Origin: Octopus bimaculoides
Taxonomy: Eukaryota
DNA length: 64,000 nucleotides
Reading direction: 5' to 3'
Assembly (NCBI RefSeq): GCF_001194135.2
Contig: NC_068983.1
Location: forward strand, 123,849,151-123,913,150
Shown in pieces: positions 1 to 45,900 of the stretch. Numbering within the stretch: position 1 is the first letter of the stretch; each line of letters starts with the position of its first letter. A program made the translations under genes and the position numbers. The notes beneath the pieces were generated by a model. That model searched no databases. It had not been told where the DNA came from and was given only the letters and a program-made list of their open reading frames with translations.

Positions 1-599
1 GGGTGACTCGCAGAGATAACATAACGAGTTATACAATTTAATTATTACATTTATTGTTCAATTACATACAAAGAACGCATTCACCCAATGTTCGTTATGA
101 ATAAACAAAAGTCATGTCCGCCATATATATATATCAATGACCTTTTACTACGACAGTCCCACAAGACAACAACAATGAAACAATGAACTCAAACGAACCA
201 CATGACACACGGAACGTCAGACGAATTACATATCTAACAGTCCATATAACAGGTGGTGAAGACGTCGGCACTGGAACTGGCTGTAGCTGTGTTCTGTATG
301 TGTGGTCAACGACCAGACCTGTGAGAGATCTGGAATCGAAGACGACGACCGTCGTTGGATCGGGCTTATTTATAGCTGAAACAGGGATCACCGGAAACCC
401 AGAAGAACTCTATCTCATGTGACTTTATCCTAAGGTCACGATTGGACGTAATGCCCCCTTAGCAAGCAGAACATGGGGACAAATGCCGCGTAAATAAGAA
501 CCAATCAGGATAGTGGACAGAAGGATCCAAGGCAGCCTAAGGCTAGATGTTAGCAGCTTCGTTATCATTTATGATTGAATGCCCGAGAGAAAGGTTTCA

Positions 600-1046
600 C
601 TACAAGTCCTTTAAGTTTGGTAGGGGATAACGATTTGGCGTGATGATAGCATTAAATCTCCTGTCATCACCAACGGATCTAAAATCCGCTTCACCCTTCC
701 GAGCTAAGTGTAGCGGAGATGCCCAAGGGCTAGTAGAAGGACGTATGAGACCAAGCTGGAGCATGTACTCGAATTCAACGCAAGCTTTCTTGAGCTTGTG
801 TGGTGCTAGTGTATGTGGACGAGAGAAAATGGGTGAACCAGTTGTTGTAATAAAATGTTGAGTCAAGTGAACTGTCTGGGTAGGCTTAAATGATAGATCT
901 GTTAACTCGAGAAATGAGGCAAGCAGAGTATGGAACTGGTTATTGGCAGCAGCTACAAAAAATGATGGGACGAGGATAGCAGCAGTAGATTCACATGCAG
1001 GCGTAGATAAAGATGTGGTAGTATCCACAAGTCTGTTTTCTGACAT
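600..1046 (-). pseudogene. Gypsy reverse transcriptase N-terminal fragment
   Basis: HFITTTGSPIFSRPHTLAP..EFEYMLQLGLIRPSTSPWASPLHLARK..FRSVGDDRRFNAIITPNRYPLPNLKDL is the typical Ty3/Gypsy RT start (IxPSxSPWASP; R.CxDYRxLN; DRYPLP); stop at 600-602. Confidence 0.92.
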
Positions 1047-1284
1047 CTACCAGAAGTGAGTAGAGGTGTAAGAAGTCCGCCCCAAGGATAAGATGTGGCA
1101 GGTCAGCGATGACAAAAATCCATTTAAAATCTCGACGCAAGGCAAGGTCTAGAGTTAAAGATATCTGACCGTAGGTTTTGATGGGAGACTGGTTCACTGC
1201 ATATAATGAAATACTTGATAACTGTGGCTTGTTAGAGCTGAACCATAACGGCAAAATACTGTAACTTGATCCTGTATCGACCAT
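991..1284 (-). pseudogene. Gypsy retropepsin (aspartic protease) fragment
   Basis: VDTGSSYSILP catalytic DTG motif, then LDLALRRDFKWIFVIADLPHLILGADFLHLYSLLVDV (ILGADFL); frameshifted relative to RT. Confidence 0.92.
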
Positions 1285-1327
1285 GAATGTCTTGTTTGAG
1301 ACTAGGCCCCTAATGAAGAAAGCACGA

Positions 1328-2116
1328 TTAGCTGAAAAGTTGTGAGAATTCTGACGTGCCCAAGCTCTCTAGGTTCAGTTTTCCCACATTAAAAGTACGA
1401 GGCTTGTTACAACAACGTGCCTTATCATGAAAACGTGCATGGTACCAACACACCGAAGAATTGTTGGTTGAAAAAGTGTTATGTCGTTTAGAAGAGAAAG
1501 AATGGCTTCGCGAACGCTGTCTAACACGACAGAATTGAGATATTTGGCGCGTTAAACCATCGATAGCCTTCAACATGGCGTCTCCATTTTCATTATCAGG
1601 CTGTTGTCGAGAAGACGATGAAGCAATAACCGAATCAGTTGCAGTGGGTCTGTGAGAAAATTCCATTATCTTGTCTACAGACGAAGCAATTTGATCTATA
1701 GTGTTGGTGTTCACCATATTCACCAATATAGTCTGTACATTAGTTGGTAAGCGGGAAAAAAATATTTTCTTTACGAAGAAGATATCCGTCACTGAGTTCT
1801 CTGATGCGCCTAAGAAATTCTGAAGTAGGTTTGTCACCCAGGTTCTCATCCTGTAACAATGCACGCGGAAACGCCTTTCTGCTGATTTAGAATTTCTGCA
1901 TAGTATTTCTGTTCTCAGAGAATCGTAGGTCATGCTTTGCGGAAGATCTGTGATGATATCTTTAACGGTGTCTGCTAATATGGCAGGAATCCCACTAATA
2001 AGCAGGTGTAGCTTTTGTTGAGCGGCTTGTATACCATGTGCTGTGAAATAAGAATGAAGCGGTGCAAACCATAGCTTAGCATCGCTGGAATAAGCTGGTA
2101 TGGAAATGTTACTCAT
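1328..2116 (-). pseudogene. Gypsy gag-like frame (262 aa) with compensating frameshifts
   Basis: YSSDAKLWF..., FFSRLPTNVQTIL and CWYHARFHDKARCCNKP match Gypsy gag; across ~1765-1870 the gag-like text (RALLQDENLGDKPTSEFLRRIREL) lies in a different frame from the annotated ORF. Confidence 0.85.
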
Positions 2117-2326
2117 GATTAGGCGTGATAAGTGACTTTCTTATTTGACGCGGAAAACACGAAATTATTTCAAAACTAAAATATCAGAGATGCTGGTAGA
2201 GTAATGTAGAAATTATCTTGAAAAGTGTAGTATGGCATCGATTTACCATGTGCTGTGGTTTGCGTATTCAAAAAGTTGGGTTTACTATTTTATAGTGAAA
2301 TGTCCACAGTGGCTATCATGTTCTTG

Positions 2327-2341
2327 ACGTCGGGTTCACCA
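2327..2341 (-). other. Primer-binding site complementary to the tRNA-Trp 3' end
   Basis: Minus strand TGGTGAACCCGACGT versus canonical TGGTGACCCCGACGT (1 mismatch), about 210 nt upstream of the gag ATG; partial second copy GGGTCACCA at 2400-2408. Confidence 0.8.
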
Positions 2342-2581
2342 TTTTATAGTGATGTCAATTAAGTGACATCCTATAATCTAATAAGCATGAGAGAAAGAAG
2401 GGTCACCATTTTGTACGTAATGACAAGAAAATAAGAATTTGTGAGACGTTTGTAATAAGTCATAACACATTTATTACCGGGGGTAATGCGTTAACATATA
2501 AGGTTAATTGAAGGATGGAGGCGGTTATCCATGCCACTTACACTTCTGGGAATATTTTTAATTTTTATTCAGGCCTTCCTT

Positions 2582-2978
2582 CTAACCAGATACAGTGGCA
2601 AAAACAGTATACTTCCACTTTGCAGGGTTCTTGGCTGACTCGAAACGCACTTCTATTGCCGCAAACCTTGTGCCTCTGGCCAGGTATTTGATTTCATTCA
2701 ACACCTGCCTGAGGCATTTTTCGATTGTTGATTCTTCTAATTGTTCAAATCTTTTTTTTTTTTTTCTTTTTTTTTTCAGAATTGAAGACTTCATAAATTA
2801 TGGTTTTTTCTTTGGTTCTGGTTATCATTTCCCCAGGCGGCGTCAGTTTGCTTTGTCCTTCGGTTTCTGTAATTAGTCCGAAATACTGTTGTATTTCCTT
2901 TTTTTTTAATTAAAATTTTTCTCCTCCGCCTACAGCAGCGGCAAAATTCAACTTCTCTGGCTGTTTGACCAAAGCCAC
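2582..2978 (-). pseudogene. Decayed retroelement ORF1/gag-like coding remnant
   Basis: VALVKQPEKLNFAAAVGGGEKF*LKKKEIQQYFGLITETEGQSKLTPPGEMITRTKEKTIIYEVFNSEKKK, frameshift in the A-tract (~2752-2776), then RFEQLEESTIEKCLRQVLNEIKYLARGTRFAAIEVRFES. The NFAAAV motif and RRM-like pattern resemble LINE ORF1; the family assignment is an inference. Confidence 0.5.
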
Positions 2979-3211
2979 TTCACAATAATAATAATTTCAC
3001 AGAAAAAATACAAGAATAGTAAAATAGTATTCCGCGAGGACCGCAATTCAACAATTCACACAAAAAGTTTTCTACCCCTCCCCCAAGAGGGAGGACAACA
3101 AAAATTATTCACAATAAAATAATAAAATGTTTCCCCTGAGGAAACCACAAACAGAAAAACAAATTCCTTTGAAAGATGACACACAATAGCAAAAATTAAC
3201 TCCTTACTTAC

Positions 3212-3257
3212 TGAATGAATAATCAAAACAGACAGACATGACCAATAAGCAATGAAT
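3212..3257 (-). other. Putative short non-coding first exon (Inr-like CCATT/TCATT to GTAAGT donor)
   Basis: Inr-like A at 3257 or 3253, about 32-36 nt from the TATA; TTCA|GTAAGT donor at 3211-3206; no ATG-led frame of note. Confidence 0.5.
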
Positions 3258-3281
3258 GGCGCGAATTTAAAAACGTGTTCC

Positions 3282-3289
3282 TTTATATA
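3282..3289 (-). promoter_or_regulatory. TATA box (TATATAAA)
   Basis: Minus strand CTTATATAAAGG, 36 nt downstream of the HSE array. Confidence 0.7.
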
Positions 3290-3298
3290 AGGGATGAA

Positions 3299-3329
3299 CC
3301 GGAAGTCTGACTTCCACGTCAACCGGAAG
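3299..3329. promoter_or_regulatory. ETS-type sites (CCGGAAGT 3299-3306; CCGGAAG 3323-3329) flanking a UPRE/CRE-like box (minus TGACGTGGA, 3321-3313)
   Basis: Exact motif matches packed between HSE and TATA in a locally CpG-rich segment of an otherwise CpG-poor window. Confidence 0.55.
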
Positions 3330-3359
3330 CTTCTAGAATGTCCGAGAACTTTCTAGAAG
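3325..3359. promoter_or_regulatory. Heat-shock element: 7 contiguous alternating nGAAn pentamers
   Basis: gGAAgc TTCta GAAtg TCCga GAAct TTCta GAAg: six perfect units and one single-mismatch unit at exact 5-bp spacing. Confidence 0.88.
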
Positions 3360-3443
3360 GTCGATGGAGATTACTCTCGTTAAATCTCTTTTTCGTTTTG
3401 CTTTCCTGCTTGACTGCCAAGGTTCACTACACATGCTTTGAAT

Positions 3444-3630
3444 AAACTCCTTGAGAACAAATATCTATCATATTTAAGATATATCCTTTTCTTCTTCTAT
3501 GGACAAACTTATTGAGAACAAATATCTATCATATTTAGAATATATTTTTTACTTTTTCTACAAACTTCTTGAGAACAAATATAGATATTATTTAGAGTAT
3601 ACCTTTTGATTTTTCTATAAATAAACTTGA
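3444..3630. repeat. Three diverged ~58-60 bp tandem repeats
   Basis: Core AAACT..TTGAGAACAAATAT(C/A)(T/G)AT..TATTTA repeated at ~3444, ~3505 and ~3562. Confidence 0.8.
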
Positions 3631-3844
3631 ATACTCCCAGGAAGTGACTTCCAGTAAGCATGACCATCTGTAGTAGCTGGAAATTTTCCAGCTTTATCCC
3701 AGTATTTTCTTCCAGTTGGTTAATGTATATTAAGTGAAGCCTTGCTTGTAATCTATTGCCGTGAGTGGGCTTCCATAGCAATAACTGATTTGCTGTCTTT
3801 TTTGCATCTTCAATAGTGACCTATAAACCATCATATATACAGAA

Positions 3845-4030
3845 TGTACATACACACGTGCACACACACATGTGAACACACACACACATACAAATGTGCA
3901 CACGTTTATGCACACACGTGCACATACACATACACAAACACTTACACACACATACACATACACACACGCATGCACACAAACACACACACAAACATACATA
4001 TATACATACATACATACATACATACATACA
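3845..4030. repeat. Compound (CA)n/(TACA)n microsatellite
   Basis: Direct reading; explains ORFs 3730-4083, 3821-4027 and 3844-4050. Confidence 0.95.
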
Positions 4031-4101
4031 TGATGGCTGCCCACTTGTGACTGAACAAAACTATTACTGACCTTTAGGAGCATTGTGCACTCAAGACTAC
4101 C

Positions 4102-5040
4102 TTATACTTCACACTTCGAGCTACATTGGTGTCTAACGAGCCCTGCTCTTGACAAACATACACAACTGCAAACATTGCAGACCAAGATTTCCCCATTCAT
4201 TACACCAGCAGTGCGTTTTTGAGCAGCACACTTGAATTCTTCATGAAGAATACGTGCTCTTTCAAAGGTATCAACTCCCTCCTTTACCTGTTTCTTCCAT
4301 CTGTGGTGATGACAAACATTGCTTTCCCAGTCAGCTTCCCACATTTCTCAGGCCTTTAATGAGGACTTTACACAATCTTTAAATTGCAGTCTTGGCTTCT
4401 GCTGGGGTCACTTTCCACTAACAAGTTCCCCATATAGTATCTGTTTAGGGATCCTACTATCATTCATTCTAACAAGGTGTCTAGTCCAGTGTAACCAGTG
4501 TTTGTGCACTATCACCTCAATACTCAGGATATTGGCTTTCATCGGGACCTGTGTATCTGGAGTTTTTAAGGTACAGCCAACATTCAGAATGTGTCTCGGA
4601 TATCTCTGAGGGAAGCGTTCAAGGACCTTTACATGACGTTTGTAAAGGGTCCATGTTTCACATGAGTAAAGGAGCAATGTCAGTACACATGTAGTACACA
4701 GCAACTTTTGTTCACCTTATGATGCTATGTTGGGACCAGACATGAGGTTCAAGAGACCTGAAGGAATCAGTTACTCTCTGCACCCTGAAAGATATTTCAT
4801 CATCCAGAGAGCAAGAATGGCTGAGTGTGCTACCCAGGTAGACAAACTTGTCTACCACTTTTAGTATTGTTCTTTCAACCAAGATAGCTGGTTCCACATA
4901 TAGGTTTCCTGGTGCAGGCTGGAATGTTACAACAGTCTTGTCCAGGCTAATGCTGAGTCCAAAGGCCTTGCAAGAAACAGAAATATGATTCACAAGTATT
5001 TGCCCAACCTTGCCCAACAAGAAGTCCGACCTTGTCACGC
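4102..5040 (-). mobile_element. RTE-clade LINE 3' fragment (RT thumb to C-terminal C2H2-like finger)
   Basis: SLDKTVV, VDKFVYLGSTLS..LDDEISFRV, LLYSCETWTLYKRH, RMNDSRIPKQILYGEL, CNVCSCVCLSRAGLVRH; frameshifted. Confidence 0.92.
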
Positions 5041-5522
5041 TACTATGTCACACTGATCCTGCTGGAGAATTATGTTAAGAGTACGAGTGTCTGTGGAGTA
5101 CTCAGTTATGTACACTATTATTCAATGAAAAAATAGTTTGTTTGATTAAACAACATTAATATTCATCAATAAAAAATCCATTTTACTTTTTTTTTTAATG
5201 TTTCAAATGAATAATGGGAAAAATATATCAGTTTAGTTTTGATATTTTCTTCTGGTGATTCTTTGTGGTTTTATTTATGATAGTAAAACAATAGATTTGT
5301 CTCCAAAACAACTTTTTGCTCTGTTTTCAAGTATCAGATCTAATCTTTTCATTTCCATCTTGCAAACTCTGTCTCGCCGTTTTTCTATTTCTATCTGTCA
5401 GTCATTCTGTAATATAAAATCCCCAGAAAGTTTTATAACATTTATTTCTTGATGATGATGATGATAACACAAGAACAATGATATTACTGGATTTAATAAC
5501 CTTTTCTACAATTTTATTTTAG

Positions 5523-5570
5523 ATATTCTTATGGGCTGGGACAGTCCACACTTCTTAAACAGCAATTCTG
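5523..5570 (+). CDS. Candidate internal exon (phase 1-1) of the unknown plus-strand gene: (D)ILMGWDSPHFLNSNS(G)
   Basis: ATTTTATTTTAG acceptor, open 48-nt frame, TG|GTATGT donor; phases compatible with the 9393 and 17433 exons. Confidence 0.55.
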
Positions 5571-5829
5571 GTATGTAAATACAAGGGGTGCATATTTATT
5601 GAATGTACCTCTTGTGACAGCACATCCTTTATCAATATATGCCATGTAGATGCACATGTGTTTAACATCTCGATTGTTAATTTAACATAGATAGAGCCAT
5701 TTTTTTTTTTCATTTAATCAAAGAAGAAATATTATTTATAACCATTGGAGATCAACATGTTTGATGAATGAATTTCTGCAGGTTCATCTTTATAGAAATG
5801 ATGTGAACAAGGAGAGAATTGGAGATGAT

Positions 5830-6070
5830 TGTCTTTTTGTTTTCCTTTTAGATTGCTCTGAGGGAAGGGGCTGTGCTGATAGTCTTCATAAGCCCTTTAA
5901 GAGCAATGAGATTGTTGCTTTTAACAGACCACTTAAACTGTTGCAAGTTGGGCCTTGCAGAAATGATGTAATCAGGTAATCAGTGAAGGAATTCCTAAAA
6001 GCTGATGATCTAAGACAAAAAGACTAAGAGAAGTGGTTAACATGAGATCTGGTGGGATCAGATGTAATAT
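5830..6070 (-). mobile_element. CR1/L2-like LINE 3' end remnant
   Basis: Degenerate translation ..LPDYIISARPNLQQFKWSVKSNNLIAL resembles the LWNxLP...xLxxFKxxV end of CR1/L2 ORF2. Confidence 0.45.
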
Positions 6071-11490: not shown

Positions 11491-14339
11491 AACAGTAACA
11501 ATACTATATTTTATTGACTCTTTTTTTTTTTTACTTCTTGACCATGCACTTTGAACTTGCTAAAATCCGGAGCCTTAAGGTACAATTTGAAAACATTTTT
11601 AAACATTTCAGTAGCAAACAAACGTTTATTTTATTGGGCACAAGGGCCCATACAAATAATATAACACATCACACACAAAAGGGATTACAAAATATACTGA
11701 AGTGCACTTATAGATGGACAGACAAAGAGGCTGGCAGATGGGGAGGCAGAGAGACAGATATGGGATGAAACAAAGATGTACCACAGTATATTCAGACAGT
11801 TTAAATTTAGTATACTAAATGAACTACCAAGGAAGGATCAGAATCCACCACTTAGTTAGGATTGAGGAAAACTCACAATTCCAATCACCTTCTCTGAATA
11901 CTGCAATCTAGAATTTCTGAATATGTCCACAAGAATATTTGATGTTTGCCAAGATGAGAACGCTTCCACATCTTTCTGGCAGCTGAACTTTTTCTGTTTA
12001 TATAACATTGTAGTTGTTTTTACCAATAGTCTATCATAAGTGTTCTATAATTTGGGATACCATCTCTTCCTCAATTTATCATTTATCTTTTACTTGTTTC
12101 AGTCATTAGACTGTGGCCACGCTGTGCCACAGCCTTGAATTTGTACAGTATTCCTTTTGTTGTTACAGTATTCCTTCAGTTGTTAGCTGTCGAGACACTA
12201 CATCCTTCAAAACATCCATGGTTCCTGAAAGTCGCCAAAAGTACACCTGATGTCCCCACCCCCATTTTTTTTTACAAAAACTTTTTTCACTGTTCACTTC
12301 CTGTGCATATTCTATGTACTGTTCATGCAGTTTTGGTTACTTTTTTCAATGAGTTGTAGTGCACCTGAGCACTGTATACAATAAGATCATTATATATTAT
12401 ATATTCCTTCGGGTCATTTTGCAGACCCATCAGGCTATTGTTAACAGTTTGGACAGTTGTGAATCTTAGAAAAGCCAAAGAAGGCTGCCTCTAGCAGCCT
12501 TCTTTCCTTTAGTCTAGACTCTTACACACTTTTTTTTTTTTTTTGTCCCAGATGATTTCCAATGTTCTTCTAATCTTCATCTTTAGTCCATGTCCACAAT
12601 ATGATGTTGTAATACTATTGCTTATAACTCCTGATTGTTATCAGTGGCCCCTGGTGCCTGTGGTACTGAAGGGTTCTCAGCATCCAGGAACAAAGACAAT
12701 TTTGGTGCTCCTACCTTAATTGAAAATAAAAAATGAAATTTTGAAATTTTATAATCCTTCCCAACTGCTCCTGGTGGCTAAACATTCTTATAACATTCTA
12801 CAATTCTTTGTAAATTGTTACTAAATCAAGGAGCATGATTAAAATAGTTCACTTTAAGTCAGTATTAGAAATGACAAACTTGAAATACTTTCCAACAAAA
12901 TTCAAATATTTTAAATGACAGAAATATGTAAAAGAGAAAAAGCAAATACAGCCTCAACTTCTGTTTAAATTGAAACATGTTTTACTTTCCTATAAATCAG
13001 GTAATACCACCAAACATAAGAATTAAGCCTGAAGCTTCTCATTCCTTTCATTGCTTATAGATTAACTTGTTGTGTTAAGAAAAATACAAACATTTGTATT
13101 TATTTTTAATAAATACAATAATATATTTCACTACCAACCATTTTATCACTTTTATCTCACTAGTTTAGTATTATTTGACTTCTCTTTATCAGCATGTTTT
13201 TCTTTTTACAATATTTACATCTGCTATTCTTCTTCCAAAATAAACAGAAAATCATGCAACAAATCTACATTTGAAAAAGCCTGCTTCTTATACTATTAGT
13301 TATAGTACTCCAAATATCTTTATAAGGCTTGCATGAAAAGCATTCAATAAACATTAGCATAAAGCAGTGGTTCTTAACCTGAGCTGTAGTGCTCAATTTG
13401 GGACATTGAGAGCTCATAAGGGGGCAGCATATGTCAGGTGGGTTACTGAATATTTCAGTAGAGTTGTGATTTTGCTTTAGAAACAAAATATTTAAACCAG
13501 TTACAATACTGATATTTCAAACACATTTTCAAAAAAGCATTTGTTATGATTAGAATATGAGTTAAACATTGCGTTTGTCAGTGAGCAAAACATTGACTGA
13601 TGATGTGCCAAGATCCAGTAAAATTTCATTAAATAAATCTCCACTTTCTTCGGTAATTTCCATAAACATTCAACATATGTCATTACTCCATGGAAATATC
13701 TAAAATGAAATCATGCTAGATAGAATAAAGTCAAGAAAACATGGATAATAAACTGCTGCACAAAATTAGCTTCTGTTTAACGAAAATAATTGCTGGGTCC
13801 TTTCTTCCCCACTCCAAACATGAGAAGAGGACCTTTGTAAATGCCATTTGGTGAAAGTGGGCACTGGGCAGAGGTATATATTCCAGGTGTGCACTGCACA
13901 CCCATTGAAAATGGCAAATTTGTTATGAATATTAACCTTACTCATTAATTTAATCACAAATCTTAATGGGAAACTGTTTTTATACCCCTATTTGCAATTT
14001 AGTGGCATTGGGTGTGGCAGCACACCCAATACAACAACCACCATATACCACTGGTACTGGGAAACAAATGGTTGAGAACCACTGTTACAAAGCCACCAGA
14101 GTAGTACACAGCAACAGTTCTCATGCAGCTGGCAAAAAATGCACTATTAAACTTTCTTACCTTTGTATTGATTGTTAATGCTGAAAGTTTCTTGATTGAA
14201 TATTTAGATAATTAACTGAAACAGTTTTTCTGTTCCCTCTTTATCTTAAATGATTAAACAATTTGACAGTAATAATACTGATATTCTATGATTGTGAATC
14301 ATAAAGTAAATAACTGTTTTACTCTTTAACCATTGTCAC

Positions 14340-14680
14340 TGGAACTGCTCGAAATCTTTCATCTTTTACTTGTTTCAGTCGTTGGACTGTGACTATGCTG
14401 GGACACTGCATTGACATGTTTAGTTGATCAAATCAACCTTATTACTCATGCAAAGTTTGGTACTTATTCTATAAGACTCACTTTGCCAAACTACTAAGTT
14501 ACAGTAACATAAACAAACCAACACCAGTTATCAAGTCAAGAGGGACTAAACATAAAGACATGCAGATGACAAGCTTCTATACATTTTCTACATGCAAAAA
14601 TTTACTTTCAAGACATTGATTGACCTCAAATTACAGGTTGCTGCGCAGTAGGACTGAACCTGAAACCATGAGGTCATACA
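14340..14680 (-). mobile_element. tRNA-headed SINE, same family as 25065 and 61766
   Basis: Reverse complement of the head GGTTTCAGGTTCAGTCCTACTGCGCAGCAACC and of the ..AGTACCA..GACTGAAACAAGTAAAAGA tail. Confidence 0.65.
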
Positions 14681-15075: not shown

Positions 15076-17432
15076 GAATATTGTATATGGTGAATAAGTT
15101 GCATAAATTTGTATTAGAACTCTAGTATTCTTAATCAGAAATAACAGAAGTTGATATGTTGAGGATTAGAGTTGTAGGGGAGGTACAGAACTAGTCTAGG
15201 AACTTTTTGATGCCACCTCATAGACTGTATTTGTCACACAGTATTGTCTACCATTCATACAGGTGACCACTGAGGTAGACAAGCAACCATTGACATATTC
15301 ACGAATAGACATGTAGCCACTGAGACAAGTAACTACTAGATGTGTAGGTGACCCTGAAGTGTAACTACTGAAGTAGCCAGGGAACCACTGAGCAAGATGA
15401 AATATTAAAGATGGTGTGAAGGTGATGATCATTTTTATTATAATGAAAGAATAGTTGAAAAATTTAGTGAGGAAAAGAAGGTCCTGCTGAGGTGCATGGT
15501 ATTTCAGAGTAGTGGTAGCAAGGATAGAATAATGGGTGGAGGGATAAATAAAGGGTGGTCATGTATATTAAAGGTTCCTCATGTGTAAAAAAGTAATGTT
15601 TAAAAAAAAAATGTGACACAGTAATGGAGTTGTGAAGAACTATTAGTAATATGACTGTAAGATAAATATCATAACACTCAGCGAGATAGGGTGAGAAGTT
15701 ATGAAATCTTTTTGAAAATACAAAACAACCTTTGAATGAATATATGTGACACCAGACATTTGTAACAATCAACATTTGCTTCAACATTTATGATGTTAAA
15801 GCAATAAGTGAGAAAGTTGGTTCACATAAAACTGTGGCTGGAATGTTTCCATGCATACCAGTCAATATTAACAAAGATAGGAGATATTTAGCATACCAAG
15901 TATTTAATTATGGATGAAAGAAGATTGTTATAGGAAAATGACAACCACCCAAAGCATATTTCCTACAATAGAAAAATATTCCAATTGTGATGTAGCAAGA
16001 GTTTGTACCACCCAGGGCAGCCCTCATCACCATGTAAAACAACATAATACACATCAACAGTGCTACCCGCTAAAGTGCCATCTGAGGTGGACCACATCTT
16101 TCCTTTTAGCTATGCTATCACTTCAAGATTTATGACAGGGTAAAATGTCAAGTGATTCTCTCACACACAAACGATGATAATATTCCCAAAGTTTCCCTCC
16201 CAATCATTTGAAAAAACATGTGCAAAACTTCAGTAGTAGTTGATATTTTAAGATTGATATTTTCCCTTTTGGTGATCATACATGTCAATACGGTTGTTTA
16301 GCTGTAAGATGGATTTTTGTTTTTGCATGCAATTGGTTTTCTCACAAAAAGTTGTCCCACCTACATTTGTAAGTCAATGTAAATAATTGCTGTGATTTGG
16401 TTCACTATTTTGATTTTCACTAAATTTTTGTGCATTGATTGAAGTGAAAGAAAAAAAGCTGTTCAGTTGACAAGAATAAGAAAATAGTATGGCTCAAAAG
16501 CAAACCCTGTCCTTTCATTCAGTATTAATCATTCATTTCACTCAAAATTAACAAATAACAAATTCAATCAAAAGAAAATATACTTTAACAAATTTTTTGG
16601 GGCAGGGTTTTAACTGTCTTTGACTATATTATCATTTTCCAAATGAATCAAATAAATGCCATCACATTAATTTTTGACAAATATATAACAAAGACACTTA
16701 CTTAAAATGAAAGAAATATAACAAAAAAAATAAACAAAACATCTCTTTTCAGAAACCTCTTTGAAAGAACATAAAAGCACAACCTCAAATACACGTAAGT
16801 AGATTCCAAATTGAATTCTTTTTTTTTTTAGCGCAGATACATCACTTTAAATAAGCTCAGTAATCCAAGCTGTAGAGAAGCTCTCACTTTGTAAAGTGTG
16901 TGTAAGCAATAAGAGCAACAGTCTAACTATCAAACATTTCATTAATTTATTGTATTTGGATCAAGAATTAATGTAGGTATGGCCTGGACAAGGATAACTT
17001 ATGCACAGTTACACTACATAAAATGAAGTTTCCAATGGCCCATTAACATAGTAATTAGTGACAGTCACTATATTAGAATTAACTAATTATTTTTAAAATC
17101 TAGAGTTTGATCTTTCAGTAGTTTTAAGTATGAATTTGTCTGAATTGAAATGCTTACATAAATCTAATCAATATTTTCATCTAAAGACTGAACAACTACA
17201 TCATTCAAAATAATATATTTGTGATTGTAAAGTTGAATAATTATATGTATAACGACTTGGTCACATTATCAGTAGCCTTTCAAGAATACTGGATTTCAGG
17301 TACTAAGAACAATGATTTTGTACTTCAGTAGAATAATAATTGCAGCCTCATTTCTTGTACTTAAAAATCTATTTGTTCCCAGTTTCAAAAGCAATTCATT
17401 CTTATATTTTTGTTTCACTTTCTTTGTTACAG

Positions 17433-18295
17433 AGAACAGCAGTAAATCAATGTTTGTGGTCTTTGATGATCTAAATAAGTCTGAAACTGATTCTAACACT
17501 GGCACTTCAAGAACCAATGAGTGTTTGGGTCCCAGACCACCAGTGTTTATTGTACCCACCCAAATAATTGAACATGGTAGCCCAAAACACTCATGTAGTA
17601 ACAGTGGTTCCCAGCTTGGGGATCATTCTCAACAAAAGCTTAATTTTAAACCATCTCTCCATGCACCAATACCAAATACTACTGAAGAAGTGCTTGCAGT
17701 TCCATTTAATTCTTTGCCTGAATCCACTAGTAGGAAACAAACACCACTTTCCCCAGTTCAAAATAATTCTCCTTTGGATATCTCCGGAAGTAAATCCCCT
17801 CCAAATGTTCCGAGGCAGCAGACTTTAGAAAAGCCATCTTCAAAAACATCTTCTGTTGATCCATCTTCCATTGACCAACATAGAAAGCAAAGTATATCAT
17901 CTACAATGGTGACTGAACCAGAATGCAAAGATGGGAACTTAGACAAACCAGAAAATCTACAAAATGAAATTCCTCCAGCAATTAAAACCAGTCGAAGAAG
18001 TCCAACAGACAAAGATGAAATAATTGAACCAAAATCACCCTATCAAATGAACTCTGGTTATGTGGAATCTCAAAATAGACCAGCTGCAATTATTTTACCA
18101 CCTATTAATGTAAATTCCAGAAAAAAAAGTGGCCAAACATCCAACTACATTGCCTTGAAATCTCCTCGACAAAGAAGCCCTGTGGGTTCAGAAAATGCAT
18201 TTTCTGGTGTTGATAATACCGAACGCAGAAAAAGTTTTATAGAAGATAAAATGTTTGATTCACCAACTCAGAAAGACCCTGGAGCTCCGAGATAA
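17433..18295 (+). CDS. Terminal coding exon (~287 aa, Ser/Pro/Lys-rich, probably disordered) of an unrecognised gene
   Basis: 984-nt open frame (17312-18295) in very AT-rich DNA; long pyrimidine tract and TTACAG| acceptor at 17432 (phase 1); TAA stop followed by an AT-rich UTR-like tract; no motif recognised. Confidence 0.75.
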
Positions 18296-25450: not shown

Positions 25451-26366
25451 TTTATAGTAGTATATCAAAAGTAAATATCGTAAACCATTTTAACTTGCAT
25501 AACTTTCCCTTCTACCAATATGTATTTCAGAAGTCTCATACCTTTCTCAAAACTTGTATGCTAAGGTCTGCTTCTTTGTCAACATCAACAACTAAATGTA
25601 CCAAGTTCAATCATCACCATTATTAACTTTGAGAAACCTATAGCTAATCATTAGAGATGTTACATGGCTACATACTATAGAGTACTATCCAATATTGATT
25701 ACATCCTGTGTATTTCTCCAATGAAGAAACACTAATTTTATTTATATATATATATTTTACTAGCTTCAGCCAGTGGGCTGTTGCCATGCTGGATCACTAC
25801 CACTTTATGTATATAAGGTTGTGAAGAATCATTATTTCTATCTGTCAATGTTTTCTATTTCAATATGTTTTCTTTCAACGTTTGATGATGTTATACACAC
25901 AAGTGCAGGCATCCCAGATTGGTCAGATCGGTCAGATCGGTGCAGTTAATATTCAGCTGAAAAGTATGTCCATTGGTCTCTGGTGAGAAAACAGAAGTGA
26001 AGTGTGATATCCAGTATTTTTATTTATGAATTGCTTTATGGACACACGTTTTATACAGACCTAGTAAGAGGTTGTGTGGAGCTAACTAGTTCAGAGGAAA
26101 TTATAGTGGTGAAAGAATATAGAGAAGAAACAAAGTATGTAGATCTGAGATTATGTTGGTGGGTAACTCTTTGCCAATAAGTTGAATAAATTTCTTTTAT
26201 GCCTCTGTACAGCAACAGGTGTAACACTGTCCCATATGTGTAGTATTCCAATGTAGTTCACAACTGAGCATTCTCGCTAGCCATTAGGACTGGAATATTT
26301 CTTGACTCCAAAGTACAATTTTAACCTTTGTAATGCCATTTTTGCATCATTTCATACATTGTCATC

Positions 26367-37900: not shown

Positions 37901-40900
37901 TGCAAAGAAATATAGTTAGAGTAAAAAAAATGATTTCAATCTGGCTTAGTATGTGGGGTTAGATATGATATTCCAGTAGAAAAAATATTAAATTTAAAAG
38001 AATAAAATATTATTCATTAGGTAAATGACCCTGATTGATATGCAGAAAAGGTAGAGACAGGAATGCCATACAGTGTACCAAGTGCAAGCGATGGACATAC
38101 AAGAAGTGCAGTGGAATGGCAGGAAGATTAACAGAGAAAATAGTCTTTGCATATGGAAGATATACAGAAGCAATAAATACTAAAGAAACCTAATAACAAA
38201 TTTTCTTGAATACCTTAGAGTTTCTATAGAGGCAGTGGACAGTTTCAGTTACTTAGGTGAACTAATGAGCAGTGGAGGAAAATGTTCAGAAAGTACAGTT
38301 GCTAAAGTAAAAATAGAATAGAGAAGGTTCAGAGATCTATTACTCCTTTTAGAACAAAAGGTTTTCTCTCTCAAGGCAAATTGCATGATGCTTGTGTACA
38401 AACAACAATGCTACATAGCAGTGAGATATCAACCCTAAATGCAGATGACAAGCAATGACTAAAGAAGAATGAAGCTGGTATGCTCCATTGCAATGTCAGT
38501 GAGCATGTATGACAGGATACAAGTATTTTGAGGGGAAAATAGATCCTCCTTCCTGAATCTCTTATACCTCTTTCACAATACCTACCCACTCCATACTAAC
38601 CTCACTTTTACCCTTGTTCGACATTCACTACACTCACTTCTACCTTCATCTGTAACCATCTGTTACTCTCTTCTCATACTCTTATCTCTAACCATCTCTT
38701 ACAATCCCATATACTCTTGCAACCTCTATCCACCCACACTTCCTGGTCTTCTATCTTCACTCACTTTTAGTTACCTTCTTGTAGTGTCAGGGTAGGAATG
38801 ATGCCAAAGCAGATGCTGGAACATGATGCAGTCCTATGACCCATCAGAACCTGCTGAACTGTCTGACACATGCCAGCATGGAAGATGGGTGCTTTTTAAC
38901 ATCCTCATATATAAATATATATAGATGGCCCTGCTCAATCTGTAGAAAAGGCATAGGTAGAAACTCCATAAGATGTACCCAATGTAAGCTATGGACACAT
39001 AAGAGGTGCAGCAATATCAAAGGAAGGCTAACTGGAAAGATAGCTTTTGTGTGTGGCAAATGCTCAGGAGTAATAAATACTGAAAACATTCAGAGAACAG
39101 CTTCCGTCACATTCCAGGGGGAAAAACTAGAAGTAGTTGATAGCTTCTGTTACCTAGGAGACCAAGTCAGTAGCGGGAGTGGATACTCTGAAAGTGTAAC
39201 TGCTAGAGTAAGGATAGCCTGGGCAAAGTTCAGAGAGCTCCTACCTCTGCTGGTGACAAAGGGCCTCTCATTCAGAGTAAAAGGTAGACTGTATGATGCA
39301 TGTGTGCGAACAGCTACGCTACATAGCAGTGAAACATGAGCCGTGACTGCTGAGGATATGCATAAACTTGCAAGAAATGAAGCCAGTATGCTCCGCTGGA
39401 TGTGTAATGTCAGTGTGCATACACAACAGAGTGTAAGCACCCTGCGAAAAAAGTTGGACTTAAGAAGTATCAGATGTGGTGTGCAAGAGAGATGACTGTG
39501 CTGGTATGGTCATGTGTTACAAATGGATGAGGACAGCTGTGTGTAAAAGTGTCACACCCTAGCAGTTGAGGGAACCTGCGGAAGAGGTAGACCCAGGAAA
39601 ACCTGGGATGAAATGGTGAAGAACAACCTTCGAACACTGGGCCTCACTGAGGCAATGACAAGTGACTGAGACCTTTGGAGATATGCTGTGCTTGAGAAGA
39701 CCCAGCAAGCCAAGTGAGACCATAACTGTGGCCTATGCCAGTGCTGTATAACCAGCTCATTTAAGAGTACCATTCAATCATTGGGCAATAAACTATGCTT
39801 GCAAAGACCTGTTGAGGTAAGTGAAATCGCTGCCGTGGGCGATGACAGTAACGCCTGATTGGCACCTATGCTAGTGGAGCATTAAAAGCACCATTCAAGC
39901 GTGATCATTGCCAGAGCTGCTGACTGGCTCCCGTGCAGGTGGCATGCAAAAAGCACCATTTGAGCATGGCCGATACCAGTACTGCCTGACTAGCCCTCGT
40001 ACCAGTGGCACGTAAAAGCACCCACTACACTCTCGGAGTGGTTGGCATTAAGAAGGGCATCCAGCTGTAGAAACTTTGCCAGATCAGATTGGAGACTGGT
40101 GCAGACTTCTGGCTCGCCAGCTGTCAGTCAAACCATCCAACCCATGCCAGCATGGAAAGCAAAAGTTAAATGATGATGATGATATATATATATACACACA
40201 CACATATATGTGAAAAAAGAACATGGGTTTGAACTTGGTATTCTTTTATTACATCTGTTACCTATCTTACAATATTCAGTAACAAATGATGTTACACTAT
40301 AAATATAATCCATACATGCACTGTGTAAGTGCAGCATGCAGACACTTCCTCAGACAAGAAATATTTCTTGATTGTGCAATCTGCACTTATGAGGTACATC
40401 AATAGATTGCATTTATAGTGTGACATCATACGTTCTGAATACTGTAACAAACATAATAAAGGTATACCAAGTTCAAGCCCATGTTCTTTTCTAACATTGC
40501 TGATGTGCTCTTTATATTACATTATAGTCCCCTCAGATTGCATAGAAACCAGTGAGAATTTCATGTGATTATCAAGAAAAGCTGAAACCTGAATAATTAA
40601 ATTATAGTACACTGAGCACATCCATTCCTACTTATATCTATATATACATCTCATTATTGTCATCATTTTAATATCCACTTATCCATGCTTGCACGAGTCA
40701 AAATTTGGTGAGGCAAGTTTTCTGCAGGACACCCTTCTTGCTACCAACCCTACTTGTTTCCAAGCAATATTTCTTTATAACTAGACATATTTTTACAGAA
40801 AACTGGAAACAAATGACACTGCTTGTATGACAGTGACACTCATTCACAACTAACACGTGATGTCAAAAAAGGGAAACACAAGCACATACACATATGGTTG

Positions 40901-42904: not shown

Positions 42905-45900
42905 ACACTTATATACACTCACACACAGGGTGAGGGTAGGGTGTACATGTATTCATCAAATCAATTCCATTTATTTAGCAGTCAACAAATGATATGAAAA
43001 CTCTGGAAATAATTTACAATAAAATAATTGAAACATTGTTTCCTATTTAATTTCAGTAACCACATGATCTATATTAGCAACTAATCTCTTATTTTATATA
43101 GTTTCATAACAGAAGTTCAAATTCGAAGTTGTAATTGATGTCTTCTACATTCCTTAAGTCAATATTTAAACAAATAGTTTCCTAATGTTTAATTAGAAGT
43201 TACTCTCTTGTTCCCATGACAAATACTTTAAATCATTTCCATCTGATGTTTTATTATATCTCAATTTCCAAAAATTGGTCATCATTAGTTACAGGTTTCT
43301 AATAAACTAAGCACTACTTCACTACATTTCTGAGGATAAGAGTGGCAACAGTATATCTATATGACGGTGTAAAAAAAAACCAGTTATCTCAAAGGATGCC
43401 ATTCATAAAGCACTAGTTTTTGGTTTTTTCATATTTATATTCTTCATTTGTATGTAAGATTTCCTTACCAATAAAGGTAATTAAGAACAACTAAATCAAG
43501 AATGCATAACCTTTTGCTAGTATTAACAAGAAATAAAGTCCTCAATAAGGGATGGCACAGCGAACCAGTGATACTTTATCATAAGATCAAATGGTAAAAT
43601 CAAGTGACATGTCTCTTCATCAATAGATGAGACATAAACATAAAAAACATACTATTTTTTTACCCAATATTTATGCTTTTACATTATGCCCAAGAGGTAT
43701 TTTCATTTTAACATTAGATTTTCATTTTAAGTATAAGAAAAGAAAAAAGAAAAAAGCATTTTAGATACAGCTATACCATTACATCCACTCCCCATATTGG
43801 CAAATGGCTGGATGGATTGTCATGATCTGATCCAGTTACGTGGAGCTACTGCCCTTCTGCACACACACACACGAAACTTTAAAGTGCCTTGTCTGAAGTT
43901 ATGCATGCATATAACTGCACATATATACATTTCAAGAAAAGAAAATAATGTTTGTACATACTGGATAAATGCATTCTCTGGAGTGAAACTTGCCAGTCTG
44001 GATCTGATGAGGTAGAAGCTGTCCCACAGAATGTAATATGAGAGAACCTATGCGTAAAGTAAAGCGGCTATCTTCCTCATGAACCATACTGCAAAATAAT
44101 TCAAATGAAAATATTTTAAGCTGTTCTGTTAATTAAAAACCCAAAATATGATGTTAGCTTACAGTGAATTCAGTAGATTTTATTATAAAAAGTATTAAGT
44201 GCTAATATCTCATATTGTGAAAATTAATGAAATCATAGTTTTAATGGATTTACAAAATTTTCAACCAATTTGCCATACCTCGTAAAAATAAGATAGATAA
44301 AAAAAACTGCAAAACAAATATTTTATAATAAACTGAAATAAAACAGATGATTTCTATTCATTTTACATATAGTAATTAATTTTACCTTGCTACTTGTTTT
44401 CCTTCTTCACGACACACATAAACTCGTCTGAAAACTACTAATGACTTTAGTTCATTTTCCTGATTATTCTTTGGAACATGGCTTGGACAAAAGAGTGTCT
44501 TTAAAAAACAAAAAAAAATTCAACTAAATCATTAGCCTCAATTAAACTTTGTATCAAGAGGAAAGAGCTATTGATTCTGTATTATATAAAAATAAACTTG
44601 ACAGTGAATTAATTATACCAGTAATCAAGAAACATTATCTGGATAAAGGAACAGATGCAATTATGAATATAATTTTTAAAAATATATGAAAGGAAGCAAC
44701 TTTCAGGAATTTGTTGTACTTGATGAAAACTATTTTGCAGATTGTAAAAGGAAGAATAATTAAGATAAAAATATATCAAAAATTCTGGTACATTCTATAT
44801 TCCTCAACTAAACTAAATGGTGTCCTTCAACGTTAGCTTTGTCAATCTAGTTTAGCAGTCTATTACAAATAATGTAATAACATATTTGGCAGAGACACCA
44901 TAATTCAATCTGGGAACAACATACATGGAACAATGTTGTCATTTAAAAAAAAGGGTAGACTAGATTTAGCATGCCTTGCAAATTACCATAGCATTTTTTA
45001 AAAAAATCTTTTTTAAATCAAATTACTTACTTTATCTTGATAAAATACACATCCATCTTTAATAGCACATCCAAGATGATATATATTGGAACATCGGAAT
45101 TTGAAGCAACCAAGTGTTGCTCCATTCTTATGGCAAATAGAACATTCTAGTGAAAGCCCACGTCGATAAGATTGTTCCACATTGATTAGAGCACCATTTA
45201 ATGTCTCATACACTTCATGAGACCACAAGGCACAGTTCAAATGGGTCCATTTGTCAACATCCAAGTTCAATAACCTGCAGATAAAAGTTTTTCAGCTCAT
45301 TATTTTTTTAATAGTTTCAGCACACACACACACACAAGTGTTTCTAAGTAGGAGAAAAAGTACATGACACCATTATAGAGTATATTAATTTATTTGTGCT
45401 AATCTACCTAACTGTTACTCTAGAGTTCCCCACAATGTCAGGCTAATTCATCAGATAGAATACACTGGATAAATTTATACTCAGCTTATTTTGCTCAACA
45501 AACCAGCTTAATATCAAGGGAACTACAGAATAACAGTCAACAAGATCAGCCAACAAAATGAATTATATATCTTGTGCAATTTGTCACATATGATAATTTA
45601 TATATTTCAATCATACATAAATATATTAGACAAAGATTGAGAATCATAGATTTGAAGATAGTGACAATATGAACAGCCTGAAAATGTTGATCTACAGAAA
45701 TGAGATGAAAGATCAGGACTCTTAAGAGATGATCCACTACAAATAAGGCCAAATCTTCTGTGCTGACTGAGGAAAGTAATTAATGCAGTCACATATGCAC
45801 ATGCATGCATATATAATAATTTTTACCATTAATCAATTGCATGGAATTAAGTTTATTACAAATATACTGTTATAAATAATTTCCTGTTATGAACTTCCTG

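What the first reader, a model, noticed from the sequence alone, without database searches (positions are those of the whole stretch)
3206..3359. Orphan stress-type promoter: 7-unit HSE + UPRE-like box + 2 ETS sites + TATA + Inr + GTAAGT donor in ~150 bp
Seen in sequence, on the minus strand and in canonical order: an unbroken alternating array of seven nGAAn pentamers (3359-3325, one mismatch); TGACGTGGA (3321-3313); CCGGAAG(T) sites at 3323 and 3299; TATATAAA (3289-3282); an Inr-like CCATT/TCATT about 32-36 nt downstream; and a ~45-nt non-coding exon ending at GTAAGT. Established: HSF trimers bind three or more contiguous inverted nGAAn units, TGACGTGG/A is the XBP1/ATF6 UPR element, and hsp83/Hsp90- and Hsc70-type genes have HSE-TATA-short non-coding exon 1. 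Inference: this is a strongly heat- and possibly ER-stress-inducible promoter. No chaperone CDS follows in the remaining 3.2 kb, only retroelement sequence. Its target is therefore either a host gene beyond the left edge whose first intron is filled with transposons, or the retroelement itself.
Basis: partly seen in the sequence, partly recalled or inferred. Interest (0 to 1): 0.72.

Follow-up and report, generated by a model that had tools for sequence, protein, structure and literature searches.

The report
Heat-shock promoter on an octopus LINE
The heat-shock-type promoter is real, but it is not an orphan host promoter: it is the conserved first ~190 bases of a multicopy octopus LINE retrotransposon, here a dead fragment cut off by a second retroelement, which suggests a family of jumping genes wired to the heat-shock response.

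Summary
The seven-unit HSE does not arise in shuffled sequence.

The block 3433-3241 is multicopy. Two more copies lie in Octopus bimaculoides locus L002, 84-90% identical. Both keep the HSE array and TATATAAA, and the spacing differs by only 2 bp. TGACGTGGA and the Inr are intact in one copy and altered in the other. All three copies begin at the same nucleotide next to unrelated flanks.

What follows the block is not the gag/protease/RT element. It is an ATG-poor leader and the ORF1 of a LINE. In L002 this continues into an ORF2 with an endonuclease and a reverse transcriptase. In the window the LINE is degenerate and stops at about 2515, where a separate LTR-type element begins with its own 5' end and primer-binding-like site.

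The GTAAGT "donor" and the ETS sites are not conserved among copies.

Best reading: a heat-shock-factor-responsive promoter at the 5' end of a LINE family.

Open puzzle: the TATA/Inr would start RNA 177 nt inside the element, so that RNA would lack the promoter.

No expression or binding data were available.

The parts
3241..3433 (-). Conserved ~190-bp 5'-terminal module of the LINE (promoter cassette). The element's 5' boundary is at 3433/3431 (TGTGTAGTGAAC).
   Evidence: Identity to L002:2154-2353 is 89.6% and to L002:14155-14354 is 88.1%. The upstream flanks are unrelated in all three copies.
3326..3358 (-). HSE array: seven alternating TTC/GAA units. Unit 4 is GGA. This amounts to two perfect trimeric HSEs joined in phase.
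   Evidence: 0 of 100 shuffles. The other copies have 7 units with 1 mismatch (L002_b) or 2 mismatched units (L002_a), at different units. The majority consensus equals the window sequence.
3313..3321 (-). TGACGTGGA (UPRE/CRE-like bZIP box)
   Evidence: Identical in L002_a; TGATGTGGA in L002_b, a CpG-to-TpG change.
3299..3330 (+). Two CCGGAAGY (ETS-like) sites at 3299-3306 and 3323-3330, flanking the bZIP box
   Evidence: Not conserved: CCAG or CTGG in the other copies.
3282..3289 (-). TATA box TATATAAA
   Evidence: Invariant in all three copies.
3251..3259 (-). Inr-like CCATTCATT. A3257 and A3253 lie 32 and 36 nt after the TATA box, which is +177 and +181 from the element's 5' end.
   Evidence: Identical in L002_a; CCTTTCATA in L002_b.
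2979..3250 (-). LINE leader (5' UTR). It is ATG-poor and contains the conserved inverted repeat CCTCCC..GGGAGG at 3094-3075. It also contains the non-conserved GTAAGT at 3211-3206.
   Evidence: There is 1 ATG in the 438 nt from the 5' end, against 8.8 expected (P=0.001). In L002_a there are 0 between the Inr and the ORF1 ATG, against 5.2 expected (P=0.004). The leader is colinear with the L002_b leader.
2516..2978 (-). Degenerate N-terminal half of LINE ORF1. The start-codon equivalent is GTG at 2978-2976. There is an in-frame TAA at 2912-2910 and a frameshift in the A-run around 2775-2750, followed by further frame changes. It is cut off at about 2515.
   Evidence: A frame-joined translation is 64% identical over 90 aa to the L002 ORF1, E=1e-36. 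See also the tblastx and frame views.
2342..2515 (-). 5'-terminal region of a separate LTR-type retroelement. Its boundary is TCCTTCAATTAACC.
   Evidence: The same boundary occurs at L002:9632, where the upstream DNA is unrelated.
2324..2341 (-). Primer-binding-site-like TGGTGAACCCGACGTCAA
   Evidence: Conserved as TGGTAACCCCGACGTCAA in L001 and L002. The resemblance to a tRNA-Trp PBS is recalled from memory and was not tested; no tRNA genes were found for comparison.
1328..2116 (-). gag-like ORF (262 aa) of the LTR-type element
   Evidence: Pfam DUF7041, E=4.8e-13. It is 72% identical to O. bimaculoides LOC106871348.
600..1284 (-). Protease-like ORF with a DTGSS motif (1284-991) and the start of RT (1046-600), frameshifted. 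Homology to the other copies stops at 604.
   Evidence: The homologous L002 ORFs carry RVT_1, RT_RNaseH, Integrase_H2C2 and rve.

Best explanation
The block 3433-3241 (minus strand) is the 5'-terminal promoter cassette of a LINE (non-LTR retrotransposon) family of octopuses.

Structure of the family:
- a module of about 190 bp
- an ATG-poor leader of about 270 nt
- ORF1, with a single CCHC knuckle
- ORF2, with an AP-type endonuclease and a reverse transcriptase

Proposed mechanism (inferred, not shown):
- Under proteotoxic stress, HSF trimers occupy the two in-phase trimeric HSEs, 69-101 nt upstream of the Inr.
- With the TATA box 37 nt downstream of the array, they drive Pol II transcription through the leader into ORF1 and ORF2.
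- LINE expression, and possibly retrotransposition, would then be coupled to heat stress.

The bZIP-type TGACGTGGA box may add a second input.

The window copy is dead. The ORF1 start codon is lost, there are stops and frameshifts, and the copy is truncated at about 2515 where an LTR-type element (own end, PBS-like site, gag, PR, RT) begins. At most this copy could produce a heat-inducible non-coding chimeric RNA running into that element.
For: Shown by tool results:
1. Motif reality and significance.
2. Multicopy and element-borne. There are three copies, 84-90% identical, with the same sharp 5' boundary and unrelated flanks. The HSE array and TATA are kept in both other copies and the spacing differs by only 2 bp; the bZIP box and the Inr are intact in L002_a and each altered in L002_b.
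3. What follows is LINE sequence. In L002_a the module is followed by ORF1, carrying HCFKCRKKRHLRSKC, then Exo_endo_phos (E=3e-9) and RVT_1. The closest solved structure is the L1 endonuclease.
4. The window carries the homologous leader and the ORF1 N-terminal half.
5. In L002_b the module and leader are followed by the ORF2 region, 81.6% identical over 1.46 kb.
6. A related Logan contig also shows the ORF1(CCHC)-ORF2 layout.
7. The leader is depleted of ATG, as expected for a translated mRNA leader.
8. The module (84-90%) is conserved at least as well as ORF2 (82%) and much better than the leader or ORF1 (55-70%).

From established knowledge: three or more inverted nGAAn units bind HSF trimers, and HSE-TATA spacing of tens of bp is typical of hsp promoters.

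Precedents from the literature:
- HSE-bearing mobile elements: ONSEN LTRs (PMC13602373), Caenorhabditis Helitrons (PMC6927752) and Cryptococcus TCN LTRs (PMC12810828).
- A mollusc LINE, nimbus, co-induced with Hsp70 and Hsp90 by heat (PMC3343117).
Against: - There is no transcript, TSS or HSF-binding evidence of any kind.
- Only three copies were found, and two of them lie in one 20-kb locus.
- Promoter paradox. A LINE can keep only sequence that lies inside its RNA, yet the TATA/Inr predicts a start 177 nt inside the element. The RNA that founded these copies must have started at about 3433, where no recognisable core promoter was identified.
- Within the decayed genomic copies the HSE is no better conserved than the rest of the module: 6 of 35 columns vary, against about 19% overall.
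- No TSD or 3' tail could be defined for any copy.
- The ORF1 protein has no database relatives.
- The LINE clade is undetermined.
Confidence: 0.6

Rival explanations
1. The module, perhaps with the first ~200 nt of leader, belongs to a separate repeated promoter-bearing unit X, and the LINE inserts site-specifically just downstream of X's start site. The LINE would borrow a promoter it does not carry. Recalled precedents: SLACS/CZAR in spliced-leader genes, Tx1L inside Tx1D, R2 in rDNA.
For: - It resolves the promoter paradox.
- Window to L002_a identity drops from about 90% to 55-70% close to the predicted TSS.
- In L002_b, the module and leader are joined directly to the region just upstream of ORF2, which could be a 5'-truncated insertion at the same target.
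- An ORF1 with one CCHC knuckle, together with an L1-like endonuclease, would fit the L1/Tx1 group, which by my recollection contains many site-specific elements.
Against: - No 'empty' unit X was seen; in 3 of 3 copies the module is followed by LINE leader.
- The leader after the Inr is still colinear in all three copies.
- The whole 440-nt stretch from the 5' boundary is ATG-poor, as if transcribed as one leader.
- No continuation of X could be identified after the LINE 3' end in L002.
Confidence: 0.17
2. The module is the U3 promoter of the LTR of the downstream gag-protease-RT element. This is the first reader's 'the retroelement itself', an ONSEN-like heat-activated LTR retrotransposon.
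For: - The module lies upstream of, and in the same orientation as, gag in both the window and L002.
- In L002 a second module copy lies downstream of the integrase fragment, roughly where a 3' LTR could be.
- The module starts with TG.
Against: - About 920 bp of LINE leader plus ORF1 separate the module from the element's start in the window. In L002 the gap is a whole ~5.4-kb LINE plus about 2 kb of other DNA.
- The gag element has its own conserved 5' boundary (window 2515 = L002 9632) next to unrelated upstream DNA, and a PBS-like site 174 nt further in.
- The downstream module in L002 is followed by LINE leader and ORF2, not by flanking DNA.
- L001 carries the gag element without any module.
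- No LTR pair was found by self-BLAST.
Confidence: 0.05
3. It is an orphan host heat-shock or chaperone gene promoter whose coding exons lie beyond the left edge, with a transposon-filled first intron.
For: The canonical hsp-type layout, and a GTAAGT 46-51 nt after the Inr.
Against: - The module is multicopy with a sharp common 5' boundary and unrelated flanks.
- GTAAGT is absent from the other copies.
- The sequence after the Inr is homologous to a LINE leader and ORF1.
- The left flank could not be fetched: exact look-ups of window ORFs found nothing.
Confidence: 0.03
4. The motifs are real and inherited, but this copy, and perhaps the family, is transcriptionally inert. The HSE array would then be a fossil with no present regulatory role, for instance because of repeat silencing.
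For: - The window LINE is dead and truncated.
- All sampled copies are 10-16% diverged and have broken ORFs.
- L002_a has lost most of its CpGs (o/e 0.38), which is consistent with germline methylation.
Against: - The window copy keeps both perfect trimeric HSEs, the TATA box and the Inr.
- Its CpG content is undepleted (o/e 1.18).
- HSF binding needs only the DNA motif in accessible chromatin.
Confidence: 0.3

Closest known systems
ONSEN (ATCOPIA78) of Arabidopsis; also Cryptococcus TCN3/TCN12: LTR retrotransposons with HSEs in the LTR (PMC13602373, PMC8376061, PMC12810828)
   Same: A retrotransposon carries HSF-type heat shock elements in its own promoter, which would couple element transcription to the host heat-shock response.
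   Different: In those elements the HSEs sit in U3 of an LTR, which is regenerated at each replication cycle. Here the element is a non-LTR LINE, which has no such mechanism. This is an animal (cephalopod) rather than a plant or fungus. Heat activation is demonstrated for ONSEN and not tested here.
HSE-bearing Helitrons of Caenorhabditis (PMC6927752)
   Same: A mobile element family disperses arrays of HSEs through an animal genome. Copies can confer HSF-1-dependent induction on neighbouring sequence.
   Different: Helitrons are DNA transposons. Their HSEs act mainly as dispersed enhancers for host genes. The present module is a complete HSE-TATA-Inr promoter placed in front of the element's own ORFs.
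LINE internal promoters: human L1 5' UTR with YY1/RUNX3/SOX sites, mouse L1 monomers, Drosophila jockey/I/Doc Inr+DPE promoters (from my own knowledge)
   Same: Promoter and transcription-factor sites lie in the first few hundred nt at the 5' terminus of an ORF1/ORF2 LINE. 5' ends are modular and can be shared or swapped between subfamilies.
   Different: Known LINE promoters are TATA-less and start at or near element nucleotide 1. Here a classical upstream-type promoter predicts a start at +177. No stress-factor array of this kind turned up in my literature searches.
Canonical hsp70/hsp83 promoters
   Same: Multiple contiguous inverted nGAAn units lie tens of bp upstream of a TATA box and Inr, followed by a long ATG-free leader.
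   Different: No chaperone CDS follows. The sequence is multicopy with a transposon-like boundary. Descent from a host hsp promoter could not be tested.
nimbus (BgI) LINE of the snail Biomphalaria glabrata (PMC3343117, PMC8462715)
   Same: A mollusc non-LTR retrotransposon whose RT transcript is co-induced with Hsp70 and Hsp90 by heat or stress.
   Different: No HSE or promoter is mentioned in the paper I checked (PMC3343117). Sequence relatedness to the present LINE was not tested.

Membership tests
HSF-dependent heat-shock promoter (hsp70/hsp83 type) | At least three contiguous, alternately inverted nGAAn units | tested here: met
   Seven units with one mismatch at 3358-3326; 0 of 100 shuffles.
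HSF-dependent heat-shock promoter (hsp70/hsp83 type) | HSE within about 100 bp upstream of a TATA box and Inr | tested here: met
   The proximal end of the HSE is 37 bp from TATATAAA. The Inr A residues lie 32 and 36 nt after the TATA box. The layout is conserved in two other copies, within 2 bp.
HSF-dependent heat-shock promoter (hsp70/hsp83 type) | Drives a chaperone or other host stress gene | tested here: not met
   Downstream lie a LINE leader and ORF1 remnant, then an LTR-type element.
HSF-dependent heat-shock promoter (hsp70/hsp83 type) | HSF occupancy and heat-induced transcription | not testable with these tools
   No expression or binding data were accessible.
LINE (non-LTR retrotransposon) 5' UTR promoter | Lies at the 5' terminus of a unit encoding ORF1 and an APE-RT ORF2 on the same strand | tested here: met
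   L002_a has the module followed by ORF1 (CCHC), Exo_endo_phos and RVT_1. The window has the module followed by the leader and the ORF1 N-terminal half.
LINE (non-LTR retrotransposon) 5' UTR promoter | Copies share one 5' end next to unrelated flanking DNA | tested here: met
   Three copies start at TGTGTAGTGAAC or TATGTAGTGAAC, and the flanks differ.
LINE (non-LTR retrotransposon) 5' UTR promoter | Transcription starts at element nucleotide 1, so the promoter is inherited | tested here: inconclusive
   The common 5' end and the ATG-free module (0 ATG against 3.15 expected, P=0.035) fit a start at about 3433. The TATA/Inr, however, predicts +177. No TSS data exist.
LINE (non-LTR retrotransposon) 5' UTR promoter | 3' tail and target-site duplication flanking the whole element | tested here: inconclusive
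   No exact repeat of 9 nt or more from the 5' flank was found downstream of L002_a. The 3' end of L002_b is lost in or near an assembly gap. The window copy is truncated.
LTR (U3) promoter of an LTR retrotransposon (ONSEN-like) | The same sequence forms direct repeats at both ends of one gag-pol element, next to a PBS or PPT | tested here: not met
   The module is about 1.1 kb from the PBS-like site, with LINE ORF1 in between. The gag element has its own boundary at 2515. No LTR pairs were found in L001 or L002.
UPR element (UPRE/ERSE) promoter | TGACGTGG/A core, or an ERSE (CCAAT-N9-CCACG) | tested here: inconclusive
   The UPRE-like 9-mer is present and kept in 2 of 3 copies. There is no ERSE anywhere in the window. 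Binding by XBP1/ATF6 rather than another bZIP factor cannot be told from sequence.
Spliced non-coding first exon (hsp83/hsc70 type) | A conserved 5' splice donor shortly after the TSS | tested here: not met
   GTAAGT occurs only in the window copy. L002_a has GTAAGC and L002_b has none.

The most novel reading that the evidence does not exclude
A cephalopod LINE lineage carries a complete, upstream-type heat-shock promoter (HSE array, TATA, Inr) inside its own transcribed 5' end and keeps it across diverged subfamilies. This would be a self-propagating heat-shock promoter cassette. It would make retrotransposition heat-inducible in an animal and scatter HSF-responsive promoters through the octopus genome. 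It would need a still unknown way of inheriting a promoter that lies upstream of its main start site, such as dual start sites, 5'-end exchange between subfamilies, or targeted insertion behind the cassette.
Probability: 0.3. Interest if true: 0.65.

Novelty: new variant of a known kind. Interest (0 to 1): 0.42.

Why it matters
Heat-activated transposons are well established in plants (ONSEN). HSE-spreading Helitrons reshape the nematode heat-shock regulon.

An animal LINE whose own promoter is a canonical heat-shock promoter would have three consequences:
- It would give a direct, testable link between thermal stress and retrotransposition in cephalopods, whose LINE activity is already of interest (PMC9115989).
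- It would provide hundreds of potential HSF-responsive start sites for nearby genes and lncRNAs.
- It would raise a mechanistic question about how a non-LTR element inherits a TATA-type promoter.

For annotation, the practical lesson is that this 'orphan stress promoter' should be masked as a repeat and not used to predict a host gene.

Tried and rejected
- LTR hypothesis. Self-BLAST of L001 and L002 found no LTR pairs. A weak resemblance of L002:9480-9530 to the Inr region was no better than shuffles.
- 'Common composite' hypothesis for the window and L002, that is, a deletion derivative. Rejected because the LINE parts are 55-70% identical while the gag-element parts are 86-88% identical. 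In addition, the L002 LINE ends about 2 kb before the gag element.
- Searching for more copies:
  - The ORF1 protein search gave no hits.
  - The ORF2 endonuclease search gave only two relatives. One locus (L003) is 5'-truncated, and one short Logan contig (L004/L005) has no module.
  - Exact-pattern scans of the metagenome and viral collections found nothing.
- Extending past the left edge or naming the source. Exact look-ups of eight window ORFs found nothing.
- A self-cleaving ribozyme or other RNA family that could define the 5' end. Rfam at E<=0.1 over 1-6000 gave only microsatellite-type miRNA false positives.
- TSD search for L002_a and the 3' end of L002_b: nothing found.
- A tRNA gene to check the PBS assignment: none.
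- Pfam on the other long window ORFs: no families.
- One protein search timed out, and two contig look-ups failed and were repeated.

Full report
**1. Observation**

On the minus strand the window reads: cTTCt aGAAa gTTCt cGGAc aTTCt aGAAg cTTCc, with cores at 3358-3326. The remaining motifs follow in order:
- TGACGTGGA at 3321-3313
- TATATAAA at 3289-3282
- CCATTCATT at 3259-3251
- GTAAGT at 3211-3206
- two CCGGAAGY sites on the other strand, at 3299-3306 and 3323-3330

The 33-nt HSE pattern, allowing up to 2 mismatches, occurs once in the window and in none of 100 dinucleotide-preserving shuffles. TGACGTGGA occurs once against 0.10 expected. CCGGAAGY occurs 3 times against 0.30 expected.

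Relative to the Inr A at 3257, the HSE spans -101 to -69 and the TATA box starts at -32. This is a textbook heat-shock promoter geometry (established knowledge).

**2. What lies downstream**

The minus-strand ORFs in 2116-600 are:
- a gag-like protein (Pfam DUF7041)
- a DTG protease-like ORF
- the beginning of a reverse transcriptase

The closest proteins to the gag are two 'uncharacterized' Octopus bimaculoides proteins, at 72% and 66% identity. The window is therefore octopod DNA. Its exact species could not be established.

I fetched the two O. bimaculoides loci, L001 and L002. Note that the run_python file L001.fa holds both records.

**3. The module is multicopy**

BLAST of the window against these loci found two further copies of the promoter block, both in L002:
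- L002_a at 2154-2353
- L002_b at 14155-14354

A three-way alignment gives 89.6%, 88.1% and 83.5% pairwise identity.

- All three copies begin at the same nucleotide (TGTGTAGTGAAC or TATGTAGTGAAC), preceded by unrelated DNA.
- All three keep TATATAAA and the HSE array. The bZIP box is TGATGTGGA in L002_b.
- HSE-to-TATA spacing differs by a single 2-bp indel.
- The HSE mismatches fall in different units in each copy, and the majority consensus equals the window sequence: six perfect units plus GGA.
- Ten of 43 variable columns are CpG transitions.
- CpG o/e is 1.18 in the window copy, 0.38 in L002_a and 1.08 in L002_b.
- The two ETS-like sites and GTAAGT are not conserved.

It also settles the single-copy-versus-multicopy question in favour of an element-borne sequence.

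**4. Which element it belongs to**

It does not belong to the gag-pol element.

*L002_a.* The module is followed by:
- a leader of about 270 nt
- an ORF1, frameshifted, containing a CCHC knuckle (HCFKCRKKRHLRSKC)
- an ORF2 with Exo_endo_phos (E=3e-9) and RVT_1 domains

ORF2 ends in a CPRCG...H....C motif, and the probable 3' end of the element is near 7590. The endonuclease's closest solved structure is the L1 endonuclease. This is the layout of a LINE.

*The window.* The stretch 3250-2516 is colinear with that leader and with the N-terminal half of ORF1. A frame-joined translation is 64% identical over 90 residues, E=1e-36. The window ORF1 is dead:
- its start-codon equivalent is GTG (2978-2976)
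- there is a TAA at 2912-2910
- an expanded A-run shifts the frame
- homology ends at about 2515

*L002_b.* The module is followed by about 210 nt that align weakly but colinearly with the leader. This stretch includes a shared CCTCCC..GGGAGG inverted repeat (1 of 200 shuffles reached the score). The ORF2 region then follows, 81.6% identical over 1.46 kb to L002_a, with no ORF1.

*Related subfamily.* A Logan contig of a related subfamily (72% identical in ORF2) also shows ORF1(CCHC) upstream of ORF2.

**5. The neighbouring LTR-type element**

From 2515 leftwards the window matches L002:9632-11520 (86%) and L001 (88.6%).
- The boundary TCCTTCAATTAACC is the same in the window and in L002, although the upstream DNA differs: LINE ORF1 in the window, unrelated sequence in L002.
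- A PBS-like TGGTRACCCCGACGTCAA lies 174 nt further in (window 2341-2324). Its resemblance to a tRNA-Trp PBS is from memory only.
- The L002 copy continues into RVT_1, RNase H, Integrase_H2C2 and rve domains, a Ty3/gypsy-type set.

This element is therefore a separate insertion or junction that truncates the LINE in the window. Its homology to the other copies stops at 604.

**6. Additional evidence that the module and leader form an mRNA 5' end**

From the 5' boundary to the ORF1 start, the window has one ATG in 438 nt (8.8 expected; P=0.001). L002_a has none between the Inr and its ORF1 ATG (5.2 expected; P=0.004). The module alone has none in the window (3.15 expected; P=0.035).

Window to L002_a identity is 87-92% across the module and 55-70% across the leader and ORF1. 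The L002_a to L002_b module (83.5%) matches their ORF2 (81.6%). The module is thus at least as constrained as coding sequence and far more so than the leader. This fits a functional promoter kept across subfamilies, or exchanged between them.

**7. Mechanism and the open problem**

The inferred mechanism is HSF-driven, TATA-dependent transcription of the LINE. The difficulty is that a LINE can pass on only what is in its RNA. A start at 3257/3253 would omit the promoter, yet three copies share the 5' end at 3433.

Three resolutions are possible:
- a second start site at the element's first nucleotides, with the HSEs acting as internal elements at +76 to +108
- exchange of 5' modules between subfamilies
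- the rival model, in which the module belongs to a separate repeated unit that the LINE targets

I could not discriminate between these. No 'empty' module, no TSD and no intact 3' end were available. No ribozyme or other RNA family marks the boundary.

**8. Comparison with the literature**

HSEs in transposon promoters are known from:
- ONSEN LTRs (PMC13602373, PMC8376061)
- Cryptococcus TCN LTRs (PMC12810828)
- Caenorhabditis Helitrons (PMC6927752)

A snail LINE, nimbus, is co-induced with Hsp70 and Hsp90 by heat (PMC3343117), but the paper I checked (PMC3343117) mentions no HSE or promoter. The described octopus brain-expressed LINEs are single-ORF RTE elements (PMC9115989), unlike this two-ORF element. 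Full-text searches combining heat shock element with non-LTR/LINE/internal promoter terms found no description of an HSE array at a LINE 5' end. Absence from this library is not proof of novelty.

**9. Verdict**

- It is wrong on three points: the owning element, the splice donor, and (probably) the ETS sites.

I classify it as a new variant of a known kind, a heat-shock-element-bearing mobile element of LINE type in a cephalopod. Interest is moderate because everything functional is inferred and this particular copy is a truncated fossil.

I did not build any consensus or repaired full-length element.

Noticed in passing
window 3444-3607: A 57-60-bp tandem repeat (2.8 copies, 80% matches) directly abuts the LINE 5' end. 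It is absent from the flanks of the two O. bimaculoides copies, so it is target DNA and not part of the element.
   Followed up: partly
window 3730-5038 (minus strand): ORF fragments at 4102-5038 look like the C-terminal part of another LINE ORF2 (one ends in a C2H2-like CNVCSCVCLSRAGLVRHQCS). They are followed by a long (CA)n/(ACAT)n microsatellite at 3847-4031, like the microsatellite-tailed RTE LINEs described for octopus in PMC9115989. Pfam gave no hit. Rfam miRNA hits here are microsatellite artefacts.
   Followed up: partly
window 2515 / L002:9632 / L001:11271: The LTR-type element copies all lack a recognisable long LTR. Two of them start at the same nucleotide, and the third starts about 100 nt further in, at a repeated TGGTGACCC motif. 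The short region between the boundary and gag contains three AAAATGGTGA(A)CCC-like repeats. Whether 2515-2342 is a very short LTR or the start of R was not resolved.
   Followed up: partly
L002:2154-7590 and L002:14155-15934: Two 5'-intact copies of the same LINE family lie in the same orientation 12 kb apart, bracketing the gag-pol fragment. The window has the same LINE family abutting the same gag-pol family. This may be chance in repeat-rich DNA or a real association, and it is unexplained.
   Followed up: partly
window 3094-3075; L002 ~2500-2530; L002 ~14480-14500: A G/C-rich inverted repeat (CCTCCC-N5-GGGAGG) in the otherwise AT-rich LINE leader is kept in all three copies. It may be an RNA hairpin in the 5' UTR. 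It was not folded.
   Followed up: no
window 3412-3385: The first 75 nt of the module are as well conserved as the HSE. They contain a purine-rich GCAGGAAAGCAAAACGAAAAAG stretch, which resembles an IRF/ISRE- or ETS/STAT-like GAAA repeat by eye only.
   Followed up: no
window 17312-18295 (+) and 59798-60553 (-): These are the two longest non-transposon ORFs (327 and 251 aa). They encode Ser/Pro/Gln-rich low-complexity sequence with no Pfam family, and may be large exons of host genes with disordered proteins.
   Followed up: partly
window 12078-12138, 14354-14414, 25745-25805; also 39864-40182 and 45896-46296: Several short dispersed repeat families (61-74 nt, 64-84% identical) are probably SINE-like elements.
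   Followed up: no
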